Part shown: positions 31,151-48,300 of the stretch, in pieces | Layout of the letters: every line of letters begins with the position of its first letter | Position numbering within the stretch: position 1 is the stretch's first letter | Notes under the pieces: generated by a model | Databases searched by the model: none | What the model saw: the letters and a program-made list of their open reading frames with translations, nothing else | Told to the model about the DNA's origin: nothing | From: Lytechinus pictus | Taxonomy: Eukaryota | NCBI RefSeq assembly: GCF_037042905.1 | Contig: NC_087260.1 | Location: forward strand, 25,482,001-25,546,000 | DNA length: 64,000 nt | Reading direction: 5' to 3' | Translations under genes and position numbers: made by a program

Positions 31151-34100
31151 GTTAGGTAAGATATCGCTTTTATCTTAAAACAGGAAACCTTGAAGCATAC
31201 AAACTTGAATCCAGACACACTTCAAATGATGTTATCAGTGTTTGTGGTGTCAGTAACAAATATCACTTCTTAAGAACTTCGGGAAACACTTCCGTCTCTA
31301 TATCAGTGATTGATCAATTATCAACGATTCCTATACTTTATGAAACGATTGATATATGCCTCAGTATACTTTTCACCCATCAGTAGCGGGTGGTGCAGAA
31401 AGTCTGACATCCAAACCCCAAAATAGTGAATCCATGGAGAAAGGGGAACTGGTTCTCATCTGAATCTTTGTAGGACGCCAATAAAATAGTTGTTCTGTTG
31501 ATTAAAGTGATCCACTATGTTGCTCTGTATGGTCTACATTTCGGTGACTGCTTCTCAGGACACACACTAGCATATGCCACATGATGTCTCTAACAGAGTT
31601 CCTCGAAAGTATGAAAGTAACTTTTTCAAATGGCACCAGTTAGTACAAAACTATTCTTATATCACCACAGGAGATAGAACGAATAGCTTTTTACAACAAA
31701 TCTCATTCATTGTCCGTTGGATATCAAGTTTCTCAAAGCGCAGCATGCAATGCAGTGTATAATAATTCATAACCCACGCCGTGTGAATAACTGTATTTGT
31801 TTTCTACCGTAAATAGCTTTTGTTATCAATGGGTGCGTAGAGATCAAATCAATGTCTGAATGCACTCCCAGTTTACGGTCAGATTTCAATGATAAAAGAA
31901 TAAGAGCTAGAGATGAAACGAAAGCGAAATATATAATGCATTATTTATATTATACGGTATGATTTCACAAACAGAATAGAGGAAATGGTATTATAACGAA
32001 TTACGATATAAGTTTGTTTATAGTGATTATATTTCTAGCTTAATAGTAATAATCTTCACAGTATGAGCTCATAATATTAAATAAATAAGTCATTATTCTA
32101 CGATGTGTCTCTCTGAAATTCGTTGTTTGAACAAAATCACACGTTATGAGACCACGAATACAGCCTTTCAAAGTTAAGAAAAGGGTGGTGATTGGTATTT
32201 TATTTGAGATTTAATATCATAAAGATAAGAATTACTTTTCCAAAAAGAAAAATAAACCCAGCTTGACAACCTATGAGAGGACAACCTATGAAAGAGAATA
32301 ACAACAAAGATGATCAAAGAGAAAATTATCACCAAAGAAAAGAGAGAGGCGGGTGTCTATAGTACGTGGTGGGATGGAGCAGATTTGGGAATCATGTATC
32401 TCTTTCACAAACACTGTTTTCGATATAATTATAAAAAAAGAGTTGAGAGCAAAATATCAATTATTGGTCAAAGGAGACACGTATGTTTGTGTGATAAAAT
32501 ATTGGGTATAAAGCATTCGATGTGTAAATATCCACACCAAATGCGTAAGATTTACATAGCATTTGGTGTCTTTTACCCAACAAACATGCATGGTCCCTCT
32601 TAAGCTAATATTGGGTTAACTTTTTATTCCAGAATGTATAGGTCTTAATCTTAAAGACCCGTCACAATGCTTAGTATGTTAATGGGGTAGTTAATAGGGT
32701 AGGATGGGAAAACTTTGGTAACGTTTGGTGTCACAGGAGCCTCACTCACACAAATAGAACAGAGAAAATAAACCATAGTGTCATTTGTTACCAACTAGAC
32801 ACGCCTTAATACTTAAAGTTCCGACCGACTTCAAGCCATCCACTTTACATGTACATGCATTTAAAGGCTGGCACCCCTCTACAATAACCTAATAGATGTA
32901 ACCGTCGAGGTAACCTAATTCGTTAAGCTAAAATCCGGCGGGCAATGAGGAGATCGATTTCGTTTAAAATGATTTCATACAGCTGCACACAATAATTATT
33001 AATCAACAATATTTATGCTTACTACGTATGTCACTAACGTGATATTAGAAAGCTGTCAGAGTTAAAATTGATTTTTAGTTAATGACGCAATGCTTCATAA
33101 CATGACGATTTGGATTTATAGGTTGTACGTTTTCTTTCTATAGAGAGGAAGGACGGGGGGGGGGGGGGTGAGAGGAACGGAGGTAGATGAACACATGAAA
33201 CTTCTCTCACTTTCATTCTCTTTCCCTCTTGGTTTAAATTTCTATTTTAATTTTGTTGTTCCTCATTCTTATCTTTGATTTTCATCATTTTGCATGTTCA
33301 TATTTTAATTGCTTCCCTTTATATTCCTTGTATTTAATAGTAAATTTCTCTTGACAATTTTCTTGTATTACTNNNNNNNNNNNNNNNNNNNNNNNNNNNN
33401 NNNNNNNNNNNNNNNNNNNNNNNNNNNNNNNNNNNNNNNNNNNNNNNNNNNNNNNNNNNNNNNNNNNNNNNNNNNNNNNNNNNNNNNNNNNNNNNNNNNN
33501 NNNNNNNNNNNNNNNNNNNNNNNNNNNNNNNNNNNNNNNNNNNNNNNNNNNNNNNNNNNNNNNNNNNNNNNNNNNNNNNNNNNNNNNNNNNNNNNNNNNN
33601 NNNNNNACACACGGGAATAAAAAAATAATTCACCTAGAAACTTACAGGTTTGTTTGTCATTTAATCTACAGTAAAATCGTATCATACCAATTGTATATAA
33701 TTCAATGCGCCAGCATTTACCATCCGGCCATACATATGCAAATGACTGAAAACTATACAATGCATAATAATATTAATAATAAACAAGACTTTCGTCACAC
33801 TCTCAAATGTTTAATTTTTCCTCTTAATCTCAAATGACCATGCTGCATTTTGTCTATATACATCTTCCATCACATCATTTATTAAAAGAATTCATTATGA
33901 AAGAGTATAAGAACAAACTGTACAAGATGTATGTGAAGTGGCAAGGCATTATACTACATTCTCAAAGTGTTACTGACATATCGTTGATTCGAGAAACAGT
34001 TTTAAAAACAATTACAAAAACGCCCCTCCCAATTTTGATTAAACAATTATGGAAATAATACGAGAAAAACATAACGAGGGTTAACTGAATCTGTACAAGC

Positions 34101-38588: not shown

Positions 38589-39193
38589 GGGAGTGTTTCA
38601 TAAAGCGGTTCGCAAGTAACAAGTTACTTTACGGAAGACTGGTGATCCTTTCTTTTGGTAAATGACTTCTATTGGCGTTGATTTCAAGTTCCTCATGTTC
38701 CTAACAAAGGATCACCAGTCGTTCATAAAGTCACCTGTAACCTATGAAGAGCTTTATGAAACACCAACCTGATGGAAGAGAGGTTGGACGAAGAAACAGC
38801 ATTCCTCTTTGATCCTTGTAAGTTTCCCAGAGGAGTGTTTCACATACAGTTTTGTCAGTTATTTTCACCGACTTACTTGTTGTAAGCTACTGAAATCCTT
38901 TCATCTGATTGGCTCAAAGCAAACAGTAAAAATCACTAACAAGGTAGTTCATGAAACTACAACTGGAGACGATTTCATGAAATAAATAATGAATTCACTG
39001 ACATATGTTTCAGGCTACTGAAATCCTTGCATTTGATTGGCTCATGAAACTACAACTGGAGACAATTTCATGAAATAAATAATGATTTCACTGATCTATG
39101 TTTCAGGCTACTGAAATCCTTGCATCTGATTGGCAGAGAGCAAATTATTAAGCAAAAATCACTAACAAGATATTTCATGAAACACTTCCCTGG
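38589..39193. mobile_element. Cluster of CWG-target MITEs in the proximal FARP 3'UTR: one hairpin element plus three head-to-tail related units
   Basis: gagtgtttcataaag...ctttatgaaacacc (38589-38771); repeated gctactgaaatccttgcatctgattggc cores and tcatgaaactacaactggagac junctions (38828-39193). Confidence 0.75.
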
Positions 39194-39291: not shown

Positions 39292-39352
39292 TTACATGAC
39301 ATCATTCTCCATCTTACTGGAATAGGTAGCACTTTTTAGCACTTCCATCCAC
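39292..39352 (-). CDS. FARP1/2: FARP terminal coding exon (WMEVLKSATYSSKMENDVM*)
   Basis: ttcacag acceptor; RWMEV motif; TAA at 39292-39294. Confidence 0.95.
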
Positions 39353-42300
39353 CTGTGAAAAGAAAGAATGAAGAGAAATTTAAAAAAAATACTCCTGTGA
39401 GCTTTGAAAAGTGACAGTTTTAACCTTATCAAAGTGTAGATGGAGATTACAAAACAGTTAGGCAAACATGCTTCTATGAATTTATTTGCTCAATACTTTT
39501 GTAAATAAGTTAAGCCAATACAATCCATTACTTTATGTGTCATGCCTATATTAGAACATGATACATCAGAATGAATTTACAAGGTAAAAAGGAATTAAAT
39601 TAAGTATCAAAGGAATGACCTAGCTTATGATAGCTCATGGCACTGGACAATAATAGTCCAGTGCTGTTATTCTTAGATATGTGTAGACTCAAAACTATTC
39701 ATTTCCATTTTTCCATGAACTGTCCTACAAGATTTGGGACAACATGCTATTCATTATAGTATGGCCTTATCCATCGCTGGTATTATGCAACAATGTAAAG
39801 AAGATGTTTCACAAAATAAAGTGACTTTAAATCAAGCTTAAGTGCCAATGTGCAAATGAAATCTAACACATGGCCAGTTCCATAAAGTATCTTCGTCTAA
39901 CCTCCAATGCTAGGGATGTTCTTGAAATCCTTTGAACCCTAAATTTTATTTGTTTCTAGTTCAAATGAAAAGATGTAATGCTCTCAGATTACCATGGATG
40001 GAGCAGGTCATGAAGTAGAGCAAGAATAGAGAAAGATGGGGTTGGACATCCAAAAAGGTAAATTATTTTATGGCACTGCCCAGATAATCTGCATGACGAT
40101 GAAGTCGCACAGATATAACCTACATGAATATAGTCATGCTTAATATTTTGTGAAACACGCTCCCCCCCGCCATGTATGTTGACATTGAAAAGAAATTGTT
40201 ATGAGATGCTTACCTGCTGAATGTGTACTCGCTCTCTGCCCTGAAGAAATAGACGTGGGTCTTGAATTGTAGCTTGAAGACATAGTCTTTACGAATATCA
40301 TCCTCTTCAGCTGGTATCATCACAGAGTAGCCCAGTAGGGGGAGGCTCGCTAAGGGGTAATCGTCCTAAAGGGGAAAGGAATGAATATTCATTGGTATTA
40401 TCAAAGAGTAACCCAGAAGGGGGGGAGGATGGTTTAGGGGTAATAGTCATAAGGGGGAAAGGAATGAATATTCATTGGTATCTACACAGAGTAACCCAGA
40501 AGGGGGAGGCTCGCTAAGGGGTAATCGTCCTAAAGGGGAAAGGAATGAATATCATTAACTAAAGGGTAATCATTAAGCATTATCTGACTTGACAAGATAT
40601 TGCTATAAAGGCTGTGTCACATCCTTCCGTGCAAGCATTGCAGGGAACTATTTTGATACCCACAGGTCGCCCGCATTGACAGTATCTCACACGTATCAAG
40701 CACGCAGATGCCCACAGAAGCGCAGGCAAGAATGGTTTTGAACATTCTCTAAACTTTGTTGCGGGTGAGTTGCGGGGCAATCACCTGCAAGGCTTGCACG
40801 GAAGGATGTGACAGGGCCTTAAGCAACTGAAATACTGTAATTTGATTTGCTGAGTAACAAAAAGAGTAGCAAAAATGTAATAGACCAATAACAAAATGTA
40901 TGAAGCATGACCCATAGAAGAAATGACCAGACTAACCTGATGGCTTTTATAGAAGAAGAGACAGAAGTTTGTAAAAACCACCCACAGCTTCTGCCATCCA
41001 TTGCTGTTCTTGAATTTACGCAATAAAAATCCACTCAACTGATTCTGTCAAAGAGATAAAGAAGAAATGAAGAAATCCAATAATTACATATCAGTTGTGT
41101 TGTGTTTAAACACCACTAAAACAATCAGATGCATGTCCTAAATGTGTATATATTTTTTAAACCTTACATACACTTATTCTAGGGCCGAGTTTACGCGACC
41201 TCATAAGTGAGAATCACAAACACAAACATAAATCATGGCAAAAGCAATTCTCCAGAAATGTGTTTCAAAATGTTTTAAATCATGATTTTAGATTTAAAAA
41301 GTGGCACATAGACGAACCCTACGATGGATAAAAACTTAGCTCTTGTAATCCCAAATGAGACTGGTTCAACAGTCAAACTTAACTAAAATTCAGAGTTCAG
41401 AACTATAATTCTATGATTTGCACTCTTTCTTCTTTGAATATTTCAATTATTTTTCTACCTCCAACAGACAAATTTAATATAGCAATTTTGAATTTGACAC
41501 CATCCTTCACAAAAAAAATTGATGTGAAAGTACCTCTACGGCCTGGACATGATCCGCCATGCTAACGCTAGTATTACGATGCCAAAAAACATGAATGGTT
41601 GTATTAAAATATCAATGTGAACGTACCTCTACGGCCTGTACATGGTCCGCCATGCTTACACTGGTATTACGATGACAACAAACATGAACTGTTGTATTAA
41701 AATATCAATGTGAACGTACCTCTACGGCCTGCACATGGTCCGCCATGCTAACACTGGTATTACGATGCCAACAAACATGAACTGTTGTATTAAAATATCA
41801 ATGTGAACGTACCTCTACGGCCTGTACATGGTCCGCCATGCTAACACTGGTATTACGATGCCAACAAACATGAACTCTTGTATCAAAATATCAATGTGAA
41901 CGTACCTCTACGGCCTGTACATGGTCCGCCATACTAACACTAGTATTACGATGCCAACAAACATGAACCGTTGTATTAGCCCGATGGTGTGATTGACGAT
42001 CTATAGACTTGGACGGTGACGACACGTCGTCTTCTGCTTCCTCAAATGCTGAATCTTGGTCCGGCGAACCTATAAGAAAATCAAAAACGTCATGTTTCAG
42101 ATGGGCAGTGCTCATTTCATGCTGTTCGATTTAATGATTTAAAATCATTGTATTTCTACTGAGTATTTATGAAAAAAAAATTAACATAAACATGAAATTC
42201 AATTCCTAAAATAACATGCATATTGAACATTTTACTGCATGCACTTGGCAGTCTATTTAAATACATACACAAAATCAAGGAAGTTCAATATCTTTTATAT

Positions 42301-45300: not shown

Positions 45301-48300
45301 TGCTGTGGGAATAAACAGAGATTTCCACATTGCTAAATTTCATAGAAGCATTGTGCAACCCCCCATGAAACTTCTACACAAATACCACTAACAATTTCAA
45401 TGTGAAATACCACCACCATCAACATAAATACCATAATAAGAATCCCCNNNNNNNNNNNNNNNNNNNNNNNNNNNNNNNNNNNNNNNNNNNNNNNNNNNNN
45501 NNNNNNNNNNNNNNNNNNNNNNNNNNNNNNNNNNNNNNNNNNNNNNNNNNNNNNNNNNNNNNNNNNNNNNNNNNNNNNNNNNNNNNNNNNNNNNNNNNNN
45601 NNNNNNNNNNNNNNNNNNNNNNNNNNNNNNNNNNNNNNNNNNNNNNNNNNNNNNNNNNNNNNNNNNNNNNNNNNNNNNNNNNNNNNNNNNNNNNNNNNNN
45701 NNNNNNNNNNNNNNNNNNNNNNNNNNNNNNNNNNNNNNNNNNNNNNNNNNNNNNNNNNNNNNNNNNNNNNNNNNNNNNNNNNNNNNNNNNNNNNNNNNNN
45801 NNNNNNNNNNNNNNNNNNNNNNNNNNNNNNNNNNNNNNNNNNNNNNNNNNNNNNNNNNNNNNNNNNNNNNNNNNNNNNNNNNNNNNNNNNNNNNNNNNNN
45901 NNNNNNNNNNNNNNNNNNNNNNNNNNNNNNNNNNNNNNNNNNNNNNNCATCATCATTATCTATCACTGTCATCATCATCTCATCGTCATCATCATTTTCC
46001 ATCATTGTCATCATCATCATCATCATCATCTCATCGTCATCATCATTATCTATCATTGTCATCATCATCATCATCATCATCATTAGCTATCATTGTCATC
46101 ATATGCTTGTTACCACCATAATCTCCACCCACCCTCCTTGCTTACCCTATTTGGTTGTATTAGCGTATCCATGCCCACCAGATCTCTCTGTAACTCAGTC
46201 AGTTTCTGGAAGTTCTCAATCCTCTTGACACTGTCCTCGATGTCTGCAGTCAGGTCTCCTACATCTCCCATGGCAGCTGAAAGAAAACCACACATACTCC
46301 TTTAACATGTTTCATACTGAAATTGGATGGTTCCTGTACAAAACTTATGGGAATCTCAGAATTCAGTAGACAACAGGTTAAAGAAAAACAGAGAAACTGC
46401 AAGATATTTAACTACCAAGGGCCATGAAGCCAATGAGGATAGATACTCTGGTAGGCTAATGATGTTACAAGAATCAACAGATATAGCCTAAACGGTGAGT
46501 GGAATTTGGGGGAGGAGGAACAACAAAAGTGTGGATCCTATCATCTTGGGATGGTTTTCTGAAAATTGTCTAATCTTTACTTGTAACTTTTATGTTATCT
46601 CAGTAAGACGAAAGAGCTCGCTATTAAATATAATCTCAAATCGGTAATCTGAAAATTGTCTCATCTCCGCAAAAATGTCTCATATTTCATCTCTGTAAGC
46701 GTCAATTTTTCCTTGGTCAACAAATCAATAACTGTTTTAAGATTTGATCGACCAATAGCATCATCTCTTCTGTAAAAACATTTAGCACATTATTGACGAG
46801 GCATTATTATCTTTGCATCCGTGATGTTCATGCTTCGGCACTACTGTGCTAAAGATACACATGGCTTGAAACCCTTGAAACTCATTTTCCCGAACAAAGT
46901 ATACAAATATCTGTGCTGGTTCACTACAGTATACACTCACCTTTGCAATCCTTGTAGTCTGGATGTGATGGTTGATAGTGCTTCACAAGCCCTGGAGATA
47001 AGAAAGGTTAAAAAGGAATTAAACAATTGACACATTAGATTATAATAATGGCTATCTTTTTATACTTCCAACCCCATTTACATCAATTCTTACTGAAGTC
47101 ACCATAATTTGAGAGCATTGCAGCTCTTCATATGAACTACCAAACAGAGACAAATCCTTTCGTGGAGGTCCAATATACTTATGGAATAAACCCAACCTCT
47201 TTCTTGTTTTGCATCATAGTCTGATATAATTTTGAAGAATTACATGTATTCAGTGTTTAAGTTTCCTAAAACAAACACGGTCTGGGTACCAGTGCTGCAA
47301 ACTAATAAATTCCTGACAGAATGACTGCATATCAATTGTTTTGGTACCCGGTAATCTAGTTGCTTACTAGATCTAATGACTGATTTTACTACGTTAACAG
47401 TGGGATAAATCAGGAGTTGTCAGAAAAAAACATTGACATTCAGTGTGCAAAGGATTACATACTTGATTTGTCCTTTTTTTTTTCTCTATTCTAATCAATT
47501 TTTATTGATAGATGGCCTTTAAGGAACTTTCGCACTTACTTTCTAGCACCAGTTTGTAATGTAACAGCCTCTGTACAGGTTTGAGAAGGAATGTGTTGAA
47601 GGGTAGATAGCAGACCTTCTGGATCTCAAAGTCACGATAGAAAGACTCAAACTTCTTGTTTTTTCTCAACGAGGCCTCCAAATCACTCAGGACCTCTTCC
47701 AGCTTTCCAATATAACCCGTGTACAGCTGAAAAAGTAGAATTTAAGAAGTTAACAAGAGAAATTTTAGAAAATGAATTTATATACAAATAAAGCATTTAA
47801 AATGAACGACAGTTGACCGCAAAACCCACAAGAAGTCAGCCAAAATGAACTTTTTGATTATTATTAAATTTTGAATAAAGATCCCAGACCAAACCTTTTG
47901 AAATGGCATTCATGTTGAAAAATTGGTCAATGACAACACTTGAAACAATGTAGAAGAAATTCACAGAGAGCTCCAAGAATGACATGTACAAAAAAAAAGG
48001 GAAAAAAATAGAAAACATGTTCTCACAGAAACTCTTCTACCACTTTTTGGGGTTTAACCTGCTATTTTAGAGGATCTTGGATGCTTTAATCATGTATTCA
48101 TCTTTTTAACCCTTTGGTGACTGAGTGATTTAGCTAAAACACATGTATTCCATAGACTCAAGCCCACACATATGAGTGCTCAGTCTTTAACAGGTTAATT
48201 TGAATGTTATGGTAAACTTACCTTCAAATGTTGAGCATTCTTGAGAAGTATATCACCTACTCTCTGGAAACCACCTTTGCCCTGGGCATTGGGCCTGCCT

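What the first reader, a model, noticed from the sequence alone, without database searches (positions are those of the whole stretch)
40312..40555. Mirror case 1.2 kb away: triplicated splice acceptor plus exon start, with an intact upstream decoy leading to a stop
Seen: the acceptor of exon 40214-40365 and its first ~18 codons are repeated 3 times. The upstream-most copy (AG at 40530-40531, 164 nt before the real one) has an identical context, ATTCATTCCTTTCCCCTTTAG/GACGATTACCCC. It encodes the same DDYPLASLPLLGYSV with only two silent changes (CTA>CTT, GGC>GGT) and then TAG. The middle copy has lost the AG (now AT). Established: a stop more than 50 nt upstream of the last exon junction is an NMD target. 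Inference: a competing poison acceptor that would truncate PH2, the domain implicated in FARP autoinhibition. Two independent junction-spanning arrays around consecutive exons suggest a local process that preferentially duplicates splice junctions.
Basis: partly seen in the sequence, partly recalled or inferred. Interest (0 to 1): 0.7.

Follow-up and report, generated by a model that had tools for sequence, protein, structure and literature searches.

The report
Repeated splice-acceptor copies in urchin FARP
In a sea-urchin FARP (Rho-GEF) gene, an 83-base piece spanning an intron/exon border is copied in tandem, leaving one intact look-alike splice acceptor ahead of the real one; this is a known, usually tolerated repeat type ("mirage"), and the only hint that the copy is used is one predicted isoform in the sister species.

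Summary
The window is Lytechinus pictus, FARP1-like gene, minus strand. At 40312-40558 an 83-nt unit (29 nt of intron end plus 54 nt of exon start) occurs three times, with a truncated fourth remnant at 40559-40573. The upstream copy keeps polypyrimidine tract, AG and 15 codons, then TAG. The middle copy is decayed, with AG changed to AT.

New here: the two "silent" differences lie on the real exon's branch, so they need no special explanation. L. variegatus RefSeq isoform X2 (XP_041483016.1) ends by reading into such a duplicated copy. So the duplication is shared by the genus, and a decoy acceptor is at least annotated as used. That model could still come from short spliced reads that cannot tell the copies apart.

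Junction-spanning minisatellites are a named kind ("mirages", amphioxus). This scan's unchecked notes list others in this genome (WDR11, BRCA2, Tcf, CTR9, FUZ/ABCC4) and the donor array 1.2 kb away. A junction-seeking duplication process is not shown by this locus (P about 0.06-0.11).

Verdict: a real, ordinary new member of a known kind. The poison-acceptor reading is plausible but unproven.

The parts
40312..40394 (-). Unit C3, the authentic junction: the last 29 nt of the intron (40394-40366, AG at 40367-40366) plus the first 54 nt of the exon (40365-40312).
   Evidence: The annotated L. pictus protein P0018 maps at 100% from 40365.
40395..40475 (-). Unit C2, a decayed middle copy. It is about 80% identical to C1 and C3 when gapped. 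The acceptor AG is now AT (40450-40449) and all three AG dinucleotides of the unit are lost. It forms most of a 114-nt AG-free stretch ahead of the real acceptor.
40476..40558 (-). Unit C1, the intact decoy. The AG is at 40531-40530 and the first exon-like base at 40529. It has 15 codons identical in amino acids to the real exon, then TAG at 40484-40482. A branch-point-like TTAAT has its A at 40555.
   Evidence: The C-terminal tail of L. variegatus isoform X2 (P0020) maps 24/25 to 40529-40455.
40559..40573 (-). C0, the remnant of a fourth, truncated unit. The 13-nt core lies 45 nt instead of 83 nt upstream of the core in C1. It supplies an AG at 40560-40559.
   Evidence: 3 matches against 0 expected. 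Also.
40214..40365 (-). Penultimate coding exon, encoding the second half of the PH2 domain of the FARP1-like protein. The donor follows at 40213.
40937..41044 (-). Upstream exon, encoding the start of PH2. Its donor (GT at 40936-40935) would pair with either acceptor.
39292..39352 (-). Coding part of the last exon, with the stop codon at 39294-39292. The 40214/39352 junction is therefore the last exon junction, 268 nt downstream of the decoy's TAG.
40380..40393 (.). A perfect 14-nt palindrome at the C2/C3 unit junction. The same palindrome lies at 40463-40476 (the C1/C2 junction). These are its only two occurrences in the window. The two are predicted to pair in the pre-mRNA and loop out C2.
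41522..41978 (-). Sister array: 4.9 copies of 93 nt repeating the end of exon 42069-41906 plus its donor.
40608..40820 (.). MITE-like dispersed element in the same intron, with 37-nt inverted terminal arms. It is not part of the array.

Best explanation
This is a 'mirage'-type minisatellite: a local tandem duplication of an 83-nt piece spanning the 3' splice site of the penultimate coding exon of the Lytechinus pictus FARP1-like gene. It arose by slippage or unequal exchange and turns over like other minisatellites. One old copy has decayed, one younger copy is still intact, and one remnant is truncated. The productive mRNA uses the last acceptor, the only one continuous with the rest of the exon. 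The intact upstream copy is a cryptic competitor. Any use of it adds 164 nt, stops translation after 15 codons, removes half of PH2, and probably sends the mRNA to nonsense-mediated decay. On this reading it is a tolerated by-product and not an evolved switch. Shown: the repeat anatomy, the gene and species identity, the intactness of the decoy, the position of the stop, and the existence of a sister-species isoform model that reads into a copy. Inferred: the mechanism of origin, low usage, NMD, and neutrality.
For: The species is L. pictus: contig C16 has the same length (29,425,516) as the contig of XP_054771607.2, and that protein maps at 100%. The annotated proteins of L. pictus, L. variegatus X1, S. 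purpuratus, Diadema and a Logan transcript all continue from the real acceptor. The copies relate as ((C1,C3),C2), with two changes on each young branch. The two on the real exon are silent, and the two on the decoy are adjacent and create TAG. This is the pattern expected for a constrained exon and a free copy. Loss of every AG in C2 shows that decoys decay here. Long-period tandem arrays are common in this genome, 22 with period of 40 or more in 200 kb of arbitrary samples. The kind is described in amphioxus, where units with intact AG/GT do not disturb splicing and the clusters show concerted evolution (PMC3087553, PMC3902484). The human F7 IVS7 minisatellite is the donor-side analogue, with silent pseudo-sites (PMC1557585). 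Unchecked notes of this scan report the same kind at other L. pictus genes, with only the true acceptor seen in RNA.
Against: By sequence the decoy is as good as the real site and has the better-placed consensus branch motif. Models in which the machinery scans from the branch point to the first AG, and early duplicated-site experiments cited in PMC1557585, would favour the upstream copy. L. variegatus RefSeq isoform X2 reads into a duplicated copy, so use may not be negligible. An intact decoy in both species could mean more than drift. No RNA reads were examined here.
Confidence: 0.7

Rival explanations
1. The intact upstream copy is a genuinely used poison acceptor. A meaningful fraction of FARP pre-mRNA is spliced to 40529, giving a PTC-bearing mRNA or a PH2-truncated protein. 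This unproductive splicing is maintained in Lytechinus as a way to set FARP dosage.
For: The site is complete and has a consensus branch motif 26 nt upstream. The stop lies 268 nt before the last junction. L. variegatus isoform X2 (P0020) has exactly the tail expected from a decoy copy, mapping 24/25 to 40529-40455. An intact decoy is present or implied in both species.
Against: X2 is a computational model. Spliced reads with fewer than 30 nt (L. pictus) or up to 54 nt of overhang cannot tell the decoy from the real acceptor, and intronic pre-mRNA reads can fill in the rest. No decoy isoform of L. pictus, S. purpuratus or Diadema is in the protein cluster. The position of the stop differs between the two species (TAG at codon 16 in L. 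pictus, 11 codons later in L. variegatus), so no particular product is conserved. The X2 tail implies that the array layout differs between the species, which fits turnover and not maintenance. Notes on sister cases in this genome report unused decoys (unchecked).
Confidence: 0.15
2. A local or gene-specific process preferentially duplicates splice junctions. The acceptor array and the donor array 1.2 kb away would be two products of that process and not independent accidents.
For: Three arrays with periods 83-93 lie within 3.03 kb. Depending on the period class used as background, P for three or more runs from 5e-3 down to 6e-7. Two of the three span junctions, and the third lies about 160 nt past the stop codon, probably in the 3' UTR, so it may also be exonic. 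Notes of this scan list genes with many duplicated exon edges, for example eight in CTR9 (unchecked). Mirages recur in amphioxus genes.
Against: Given the local exon density, two of three spanning a junction has P about 0.11, and two of five arrays in about 35 kb of the gene has P about 0.06. The period class was chosen after seeing the data. The three units share no sequence. Arrays that lie wholly in introns go unnoticed and arrays wholly in coding exons are removed by selection, so junction cases are over-noticed.
Confidence: 0.1
3. The triplication is an assembly artefact, for example two haplotypes or error-laden long reads stacked in tandem.
For: Minisatellites are often mis-assembled, and the amphioxus BflGb6 mirage was mis-assembled in its draft genome. 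Only one assembly was available here.
Against: The copies differ by 8-20% including indels, and there is a truncated fourth copy. That is not what stacked haplotypes give. An independent assembly and annotation of the sister species yields a protein that reads across a unit junction of the same array.
Confidence: 0.03

Closest known systems
Amphioxus 'mirage' minisatellites (Adh3; globins BflGb6/BflGb9; TnC; PGBD5), named by Canestro et al. 2002 as cited in PMC3087553 and PMC3902484
   Same: They are head-to-tail repeats whose unit spans an exon/intron border. BflGb6 likewise repeats the 3' end of an intron plus the 5' part of the next exon. Many units keep AG/GT signals. The authentic unit sits at the exon-side end. 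Units are 81-100% identical, with signs of concerted evolution.
   Different: The phylum differs (echinoderm, not cephalochordate). This array is short (3 copies plus a remnant). For the amphioxus cases, RT-PCR showed regular splicing, whereas here nothing could be measured and a sister-species RefSeq isoform reads into a copy.
Human F7 intron 7 37-bp VNTR, whose first unit spans the exon 7 donor (PMC1557585)
   Same: It is a minisatellite that multiplies an authentic splice site into identical pseudo-sites. The pseudo-sites are functional in principle, but only the exon-proximal one is used.
   Different: It is on the donor side, so it is the analogue of the neighbouring 41522-41978 array. 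For acceptors the exon-proximal site is the last one met, so a 5'-to-3' scan would meet the decoy first.
Tandem-duplication route to new introns and alternative splice sites (Rogers model; Hellsten et al. 2011, PMC3265369; Gao and Lynch 2009 as cited in PMC3443670)
   Same: An internal tandem duplication creates a second copy of a splice signal. The outcome depends on which copy the spliceosome picks.
   Different: No new intron is created here. The existing intron is simply lengthened if the last acceptor is used.
Poison exons and alternative sites coupled to NMD (regulated unproductive splicing; from general knowledge, not tested here)
   Same: An alternative splice choice introduces a premature stop well upstream of the last exon junction.
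   Different: Those elements are typically deeply conserved and regulated. Here the decoy is young, its stop differs between sister species, and its use is undemonstrated.

Membership tests
Mirage minisatellite (junction-spanning tandem repeat) | Head-to-tail tandem copies of one unit | tested here: met
   Period 83, 3.0 copies. The copies are in register with spacing 83 and 81 nt.
Mirage minisatellite (junction-spanning tandem repeat) | The unit spans an authentic exon/intron border including the splice signal | tested here: met
   The unit is 29 nt of intron with AG plus 54 nt of exon. The exon border is fixed by the 100% mapping of P0018 and by the PDB match.
Mirage minisatellite (junction-spanning tandem repeat) | The repeat is locus-specific and not a dispersed element | tested here: met
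   There is no second match of the array in the 812-Mb assembly. Only the neighbouring MITE-like part of the query has other copies.
Mirage minisatellite (junction-spanning tandem repeat) | Regular splicing is not disturbed; decoy signals stay silent | tested here: inconclusive
   All full-length annotated proteins use the real acceptor, but L. variegatus isoform X2 reads into a copy.
Mirage minisatellite (junction-spanning tandem repeat) | Length instability or concerted evolution of units | tested here: inconclusive
   The units are of unequal age: C1/C3 are about 92-95% identical and C2 about 80%. A different layout in L. variegatus is inferred only from the X2 tail. No second haplotype or population data were available.
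NMD-coupled poison splice site | The alternative site is used in vivo | tested here: inconclusive
   The only evidence is a Gnomon isoform in the sister species.
NMD-coupled poison splice site | A premature stop more than about 50 nt upstream of the last exon junction | tested here: met
   The TAG is at 40484-40482, the exon ends at 40214, and the next exon is the last coding exon, giving 268 nt. Whether the 50-nt rule holds in sea urchins rests on general knowledge from mammals.
NMD-coupled poison splice site | Conservation beyond the neutral expectation, and regulation | not testable with these tools
FARP (FERM, RhoGEF, two PH domains) gene | FERM-DH-PH-PH architecture, with the affected exon in PH2 | tested here: met
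   Pfam finds RhoGEF, PH and PH in P0018, and FERM_N, FERM_M, FERM_C, FA, RhoGEF and PH in P0020. The exon matches FARP2 and FARP1 structures.
NAGNAG / short-distance tandem acceptors | Competing AGs a few nucleotides apart, giving in-frame changes | tested here: not met
   The AGs are 164 nt apart and use of the upstream one gives a stop.

The most novel reading that the evidence does not exclude
In Lytechinus the duplicated acceptor is really used, as RefSeq isoform X2 of L. variegatus suggests. That would make this a mirage whose decoy competes in vivo. It could be a natural, evolutionarily young unproductive-splicing valve on a conserved Rho-GEF. At the least it would be a counter-example to the rule that mirage decoys are silent, and so a handle on how acceptors are chosen among identical copies.
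Probability: 0.12. Interest if true: 0.55.

Novelty: new member of a known kind. Interest (0 to 1): 0.3.

Why it matters
Identical splice sites in tandem are natural experiments on splice-site choice. The decoy and the real acceptor share tract, AG and early exon sequence, so whichever is chosen reveals the role of position, branch point and exon definition. If the sister-species isoform is real, this locus, unlike the other reported cases, would show a mirage decoy being used. It would also show a conserved signalling gene tolerating a built-in loss of product. If the isoform is an alignment artefact, the case is a useful warning that junction-spanning repeats can seed false isoforms in automatic annotation. 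Otherwise it is an ordinary repeat with no likely function.

Tried and rejected
I did not resend or trim it, so read laying could not be used.
No eukaryote genome collection was otherwise on hand.
4. I built no joined spliced model (upstream exon plus decoy copy).
5. The big representative search and further word searches were not spent. The protein is not in question, and fragments 90% or more identical fold into the nine-member cluster already read.
6. RNA folding of the intron shows no structure that masks the decoy. The fold is dominated by the MITE hairpin and by a pairing of the two junction palindromes that loops out C2.
7. AG-free zone. The 114-nt zone before the real acceptor is not unusual, since 3 of 14 acceptors in this gene exceed 110 nt.
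8. The units of the three neighbouring arrays are unrelated, so they do not derive from one repeat family.
9. Papers PMC117041 and PMC1783408 are not held. The term 'mirage' is therefore cited through PMC3087553 and PMC3902484.
10. NAGNAG-type tandem acceptors and an assembly artefact were considered and rejected.

Full report
**What is there.** Read on the minus strand, the intron between exon 41044-40937 and exon 40365-40214 ends in three head-to-tail copies of an 83-nt unit.
- Tandem Repeats Finder reports 40312-40556, period 83, 3.0 copies, 84% matches. The repeat finder puts the copies in register.
- Each unit holds the last 29 nt of the intron and the first 54 nt (18 codons) of the exon.
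- The last unit (C3, 40312-40394) is the authentic junction.
- The first unit (C1, 40476-40558) has the same sequence for at least 21 nt before and 29 nt after its AG (40531-40530). It encodes the same 15 residues and then TAG (40484-40482).
- The middle unit (C2) is about 80% identical to the others and has AT in place of AG.
- A 13-nt core of the unit has a third match at 40559-40571, only 45 nt upstream of the core in C1, against 0 matches in 100 shuffles. So a truncated fourth unit (C0) precedes the array.
- The unit occurs nowhere else in the 812-Mb assembly.

**Gene and species.**
- The exon matches the second PH domain of FARP2 and FARP1 structures (4GZU at E 1e-22, 4H6Y at E 7e-21).
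- A word search with the long upstream exon of the same gene led to echinoderm FARP proteins.
- Their 90% cluster contains XP_054771607.2 of Lytechinus pictus. It sits on a contig of 29,425,516 bases, exactly the length of the window's contig C16.
- That protein maps at 100% identity to the window's exons. The window is therefore L. pictus, FARP1-like gene.
- Pfam places PH2 at residues 430-523 of this protein. The decoy's stop would end the protein after residue 478.
- The exon after 40214 is the last coding exon (stop at 39294-39292). The decoy's TAG is therefore 268 nt upstream of the last exon junction.

**History of the copies.**
- Thirteen or so positions group C1 with C3 against C2.
- At the two silent sites, C1 and C2 agree (CTT, GGT) and the real exon differs (CTA, GGC).
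- With C2 as outgroup, the real exon's branch therefore carries two changes. Both are silent, as purifying selection requires.
- The decoy's branch carries two adjacent changes that turn ATG into TAG.
- This is what a constrained exon and an unconstrained young copy should look like. The 'only silent changes' pattern needs no further explanation.
- C2 has lost all three AG dinucleotides of the unit, so an AG-free stretch of 114 nt precedes the real acceptor. Stretches that long occur at 3 of 14 acceptors of this gene, so I draw nothing from it.
- Both internal unit junctions form the same perfect 14-nt palindrome, found nowhere else in the window. This may bear on how the duplication arose, but that is speculation.

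**Is the decoy used?**
- By sequence it should be usable. It has the same tract (82% pyrimidine) and AG as the real site. A consensus branch motif TTAAT has its A at 40555, 26 nt upstream. The real site has TTGAT at 36 nt, and both share TTCAT at 17 nt.
- Folding the intron shows no structure that hides the decoy.
- The one piece of outside evidence is new. L. variegatus RefSeq isoform X2 (XP_041483016.1, 1065 aa) is identical to isoform X1 through the 18 duplicated codons. It then continues with eight residues that translate a unit junction and the next unit's intron part.
- Its tail maps 24/25 to window 40529-40455. So the duplication exists in the sister species, and an upstream copy is annotated there as an acceptor.
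- Two cautions apply. X2 is a Gnomon model. Spliced short reads whose overhang stays inside the duplicated 54 nt align equally well to the decoy and the real acceptor, and unspliced pre-mRNA reads can supply the rest.
- The X2 tail stops at a TAG that corresponds to an intact AG in the next unit. In L. pictus the next unit has AT. The array layout therefore seems to differ between the species (inference from a protein tail), which fits minisatellite turnover better than a maintained element.
- No decoy isoform of L. pictus, S. purpuratus or Diadema is in the cluster.
- I built no joined exon model.

**Known kind.**
- Tandem repeats spanning exon/intron borders are described in amphioxus as 'mirages' (Adh3, globins, TnC, PGBD5).
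- One case repeats an intron's 3' end plus the next exon's 5' part. Many units keep AG/GT, splicing is regular, and the clusters show concerted evolution (PMC3087553, PMC3902484).
- The human F7 intron 7 minisatellite is the donor-side analogue. Its pseudo-sites are functional but silent (PMC1557585).
- That paper also recalls that 3' site choice is widely held to involve scanning, and that early duplicated-site experiments gave conflicting results. Sequence alone cannot settle usage here.
- Earlier notes of this scan (AI notes, unchecked by me) list the same kind at WDR11, BRCA2, Tcf, CTR9 and FUZ/ABCC4 in this genome. They report only the true acceptor seen in RNA where it was read.
- Earlier notes also cover the donor array of this same gene. 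The scan has thus found this kind before on other DNA. These notes lowered my prior for heavy use of the decoy and gave me the term, which I then checked in the literature.

**A junction-seeking process?**
- In 200 kb of arbitrary samples of this genome there are 22 arrays with period of 40 or more. Eight of them belong to dispersed satellite families.
- Only five have period 40-130, and only one has period 60-130.
- Three arrays within 3.03 kb therefore have P between 5e-3 and 6e-7, depending on a class chosen after the fact. That is a local cluster, but of uncertain weight in a genome-wide scan.
- Given the exon density, two of three arrays spanning a junction has P about 0.11. Two of five arrays in about 35 kb of the gene has P about 0.06.
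- The three units are unrelated.
- This locus does not show a junction preference. The question needs a genome-wide count against the annotation.

**Verdict.** This is a real, locally generated junction-spanning minisatellite and a new member of a known kind. The 'poison acceptor' reading is anatomically sound and has one suggestive but fallible support, the sister-species isoform X2. The idea of a junction-directed duplication process is not supported by this locus. My rough odds are:

| Reading | Odds |
|---|---|
| Tolerated mirage whose decoy is little used | 0.7 |
| Appreciably used or maintained poison acceptor | 0.15 |
| Junction-directed duplication process (can hold alongside either reading above) | 0.1 |
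| Assembly artefact | 0.03 |

Noticed in passing
window 40608-40820: A MITE-like element lies in the same intron. It has 37-nt inverted terminal arms, 92% complementary, 139 nt apart. The arm-side 90 nt has at least 40 scored matches (163 candidates) at 76-88% identity across the genome. It dominates the predicted fold of the intron (z -5.5).
   Followed up: partly
window 40380-40393 and 40463-40476: A perfect 14-nt palindrome sits exactly at both internal unit junctions of the array and nowhere else in the window. The two copies are predicted to pair in the pre-mRNA and loop out the decayed middle unit. An imperfect version precedes C1.
   Followed up: partly
P0020 (XP_041483016.1, L. variegatus isoform X2), tail mapping to window 40529-40455: A RefSeq isoform of the sister species ends inside a duplicated junction copy. 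This is either real use of a mirage decoy or an annotation artefact from reads that cannot tell the copies apart. The same could affect other mirage genes.
   Followed up: partly
window 38949-39134: A third array (93 nt x 2.0, 94% matches) begins about 160 nt downstream of the FARP stop codon, probably in the 3' UTR. Its unit is unrelated to the other two arrays.
   Followed up: partly
L010-L029 (20 arbitrary 10-kb samples of G000): Long-period tandem arrays are very common, 22 with period of 40 or more in 200 kb. Ten have periods of 147-163 nt. At least three small dispersed families link arrays on different chromosomes, for example L013/L025/L027, L013/L021 and L026/L028.
   Followed up: partly
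L009 9525-9995 (G000:C16:25555525-25555995): A 113-nt x 4.2 purine-rich array lies in a FERM-region intron of the same gene. It does not touch an exon; the nearest mapped exon is 8892-8719.
   Followed up: partly
window 45400-45950 and 33370-33630: Runs of N (1,270 in all in the window) lie next to a (CAT)n / 51-nt array, just downstream of exon 46276-46146.
   Followed up: no
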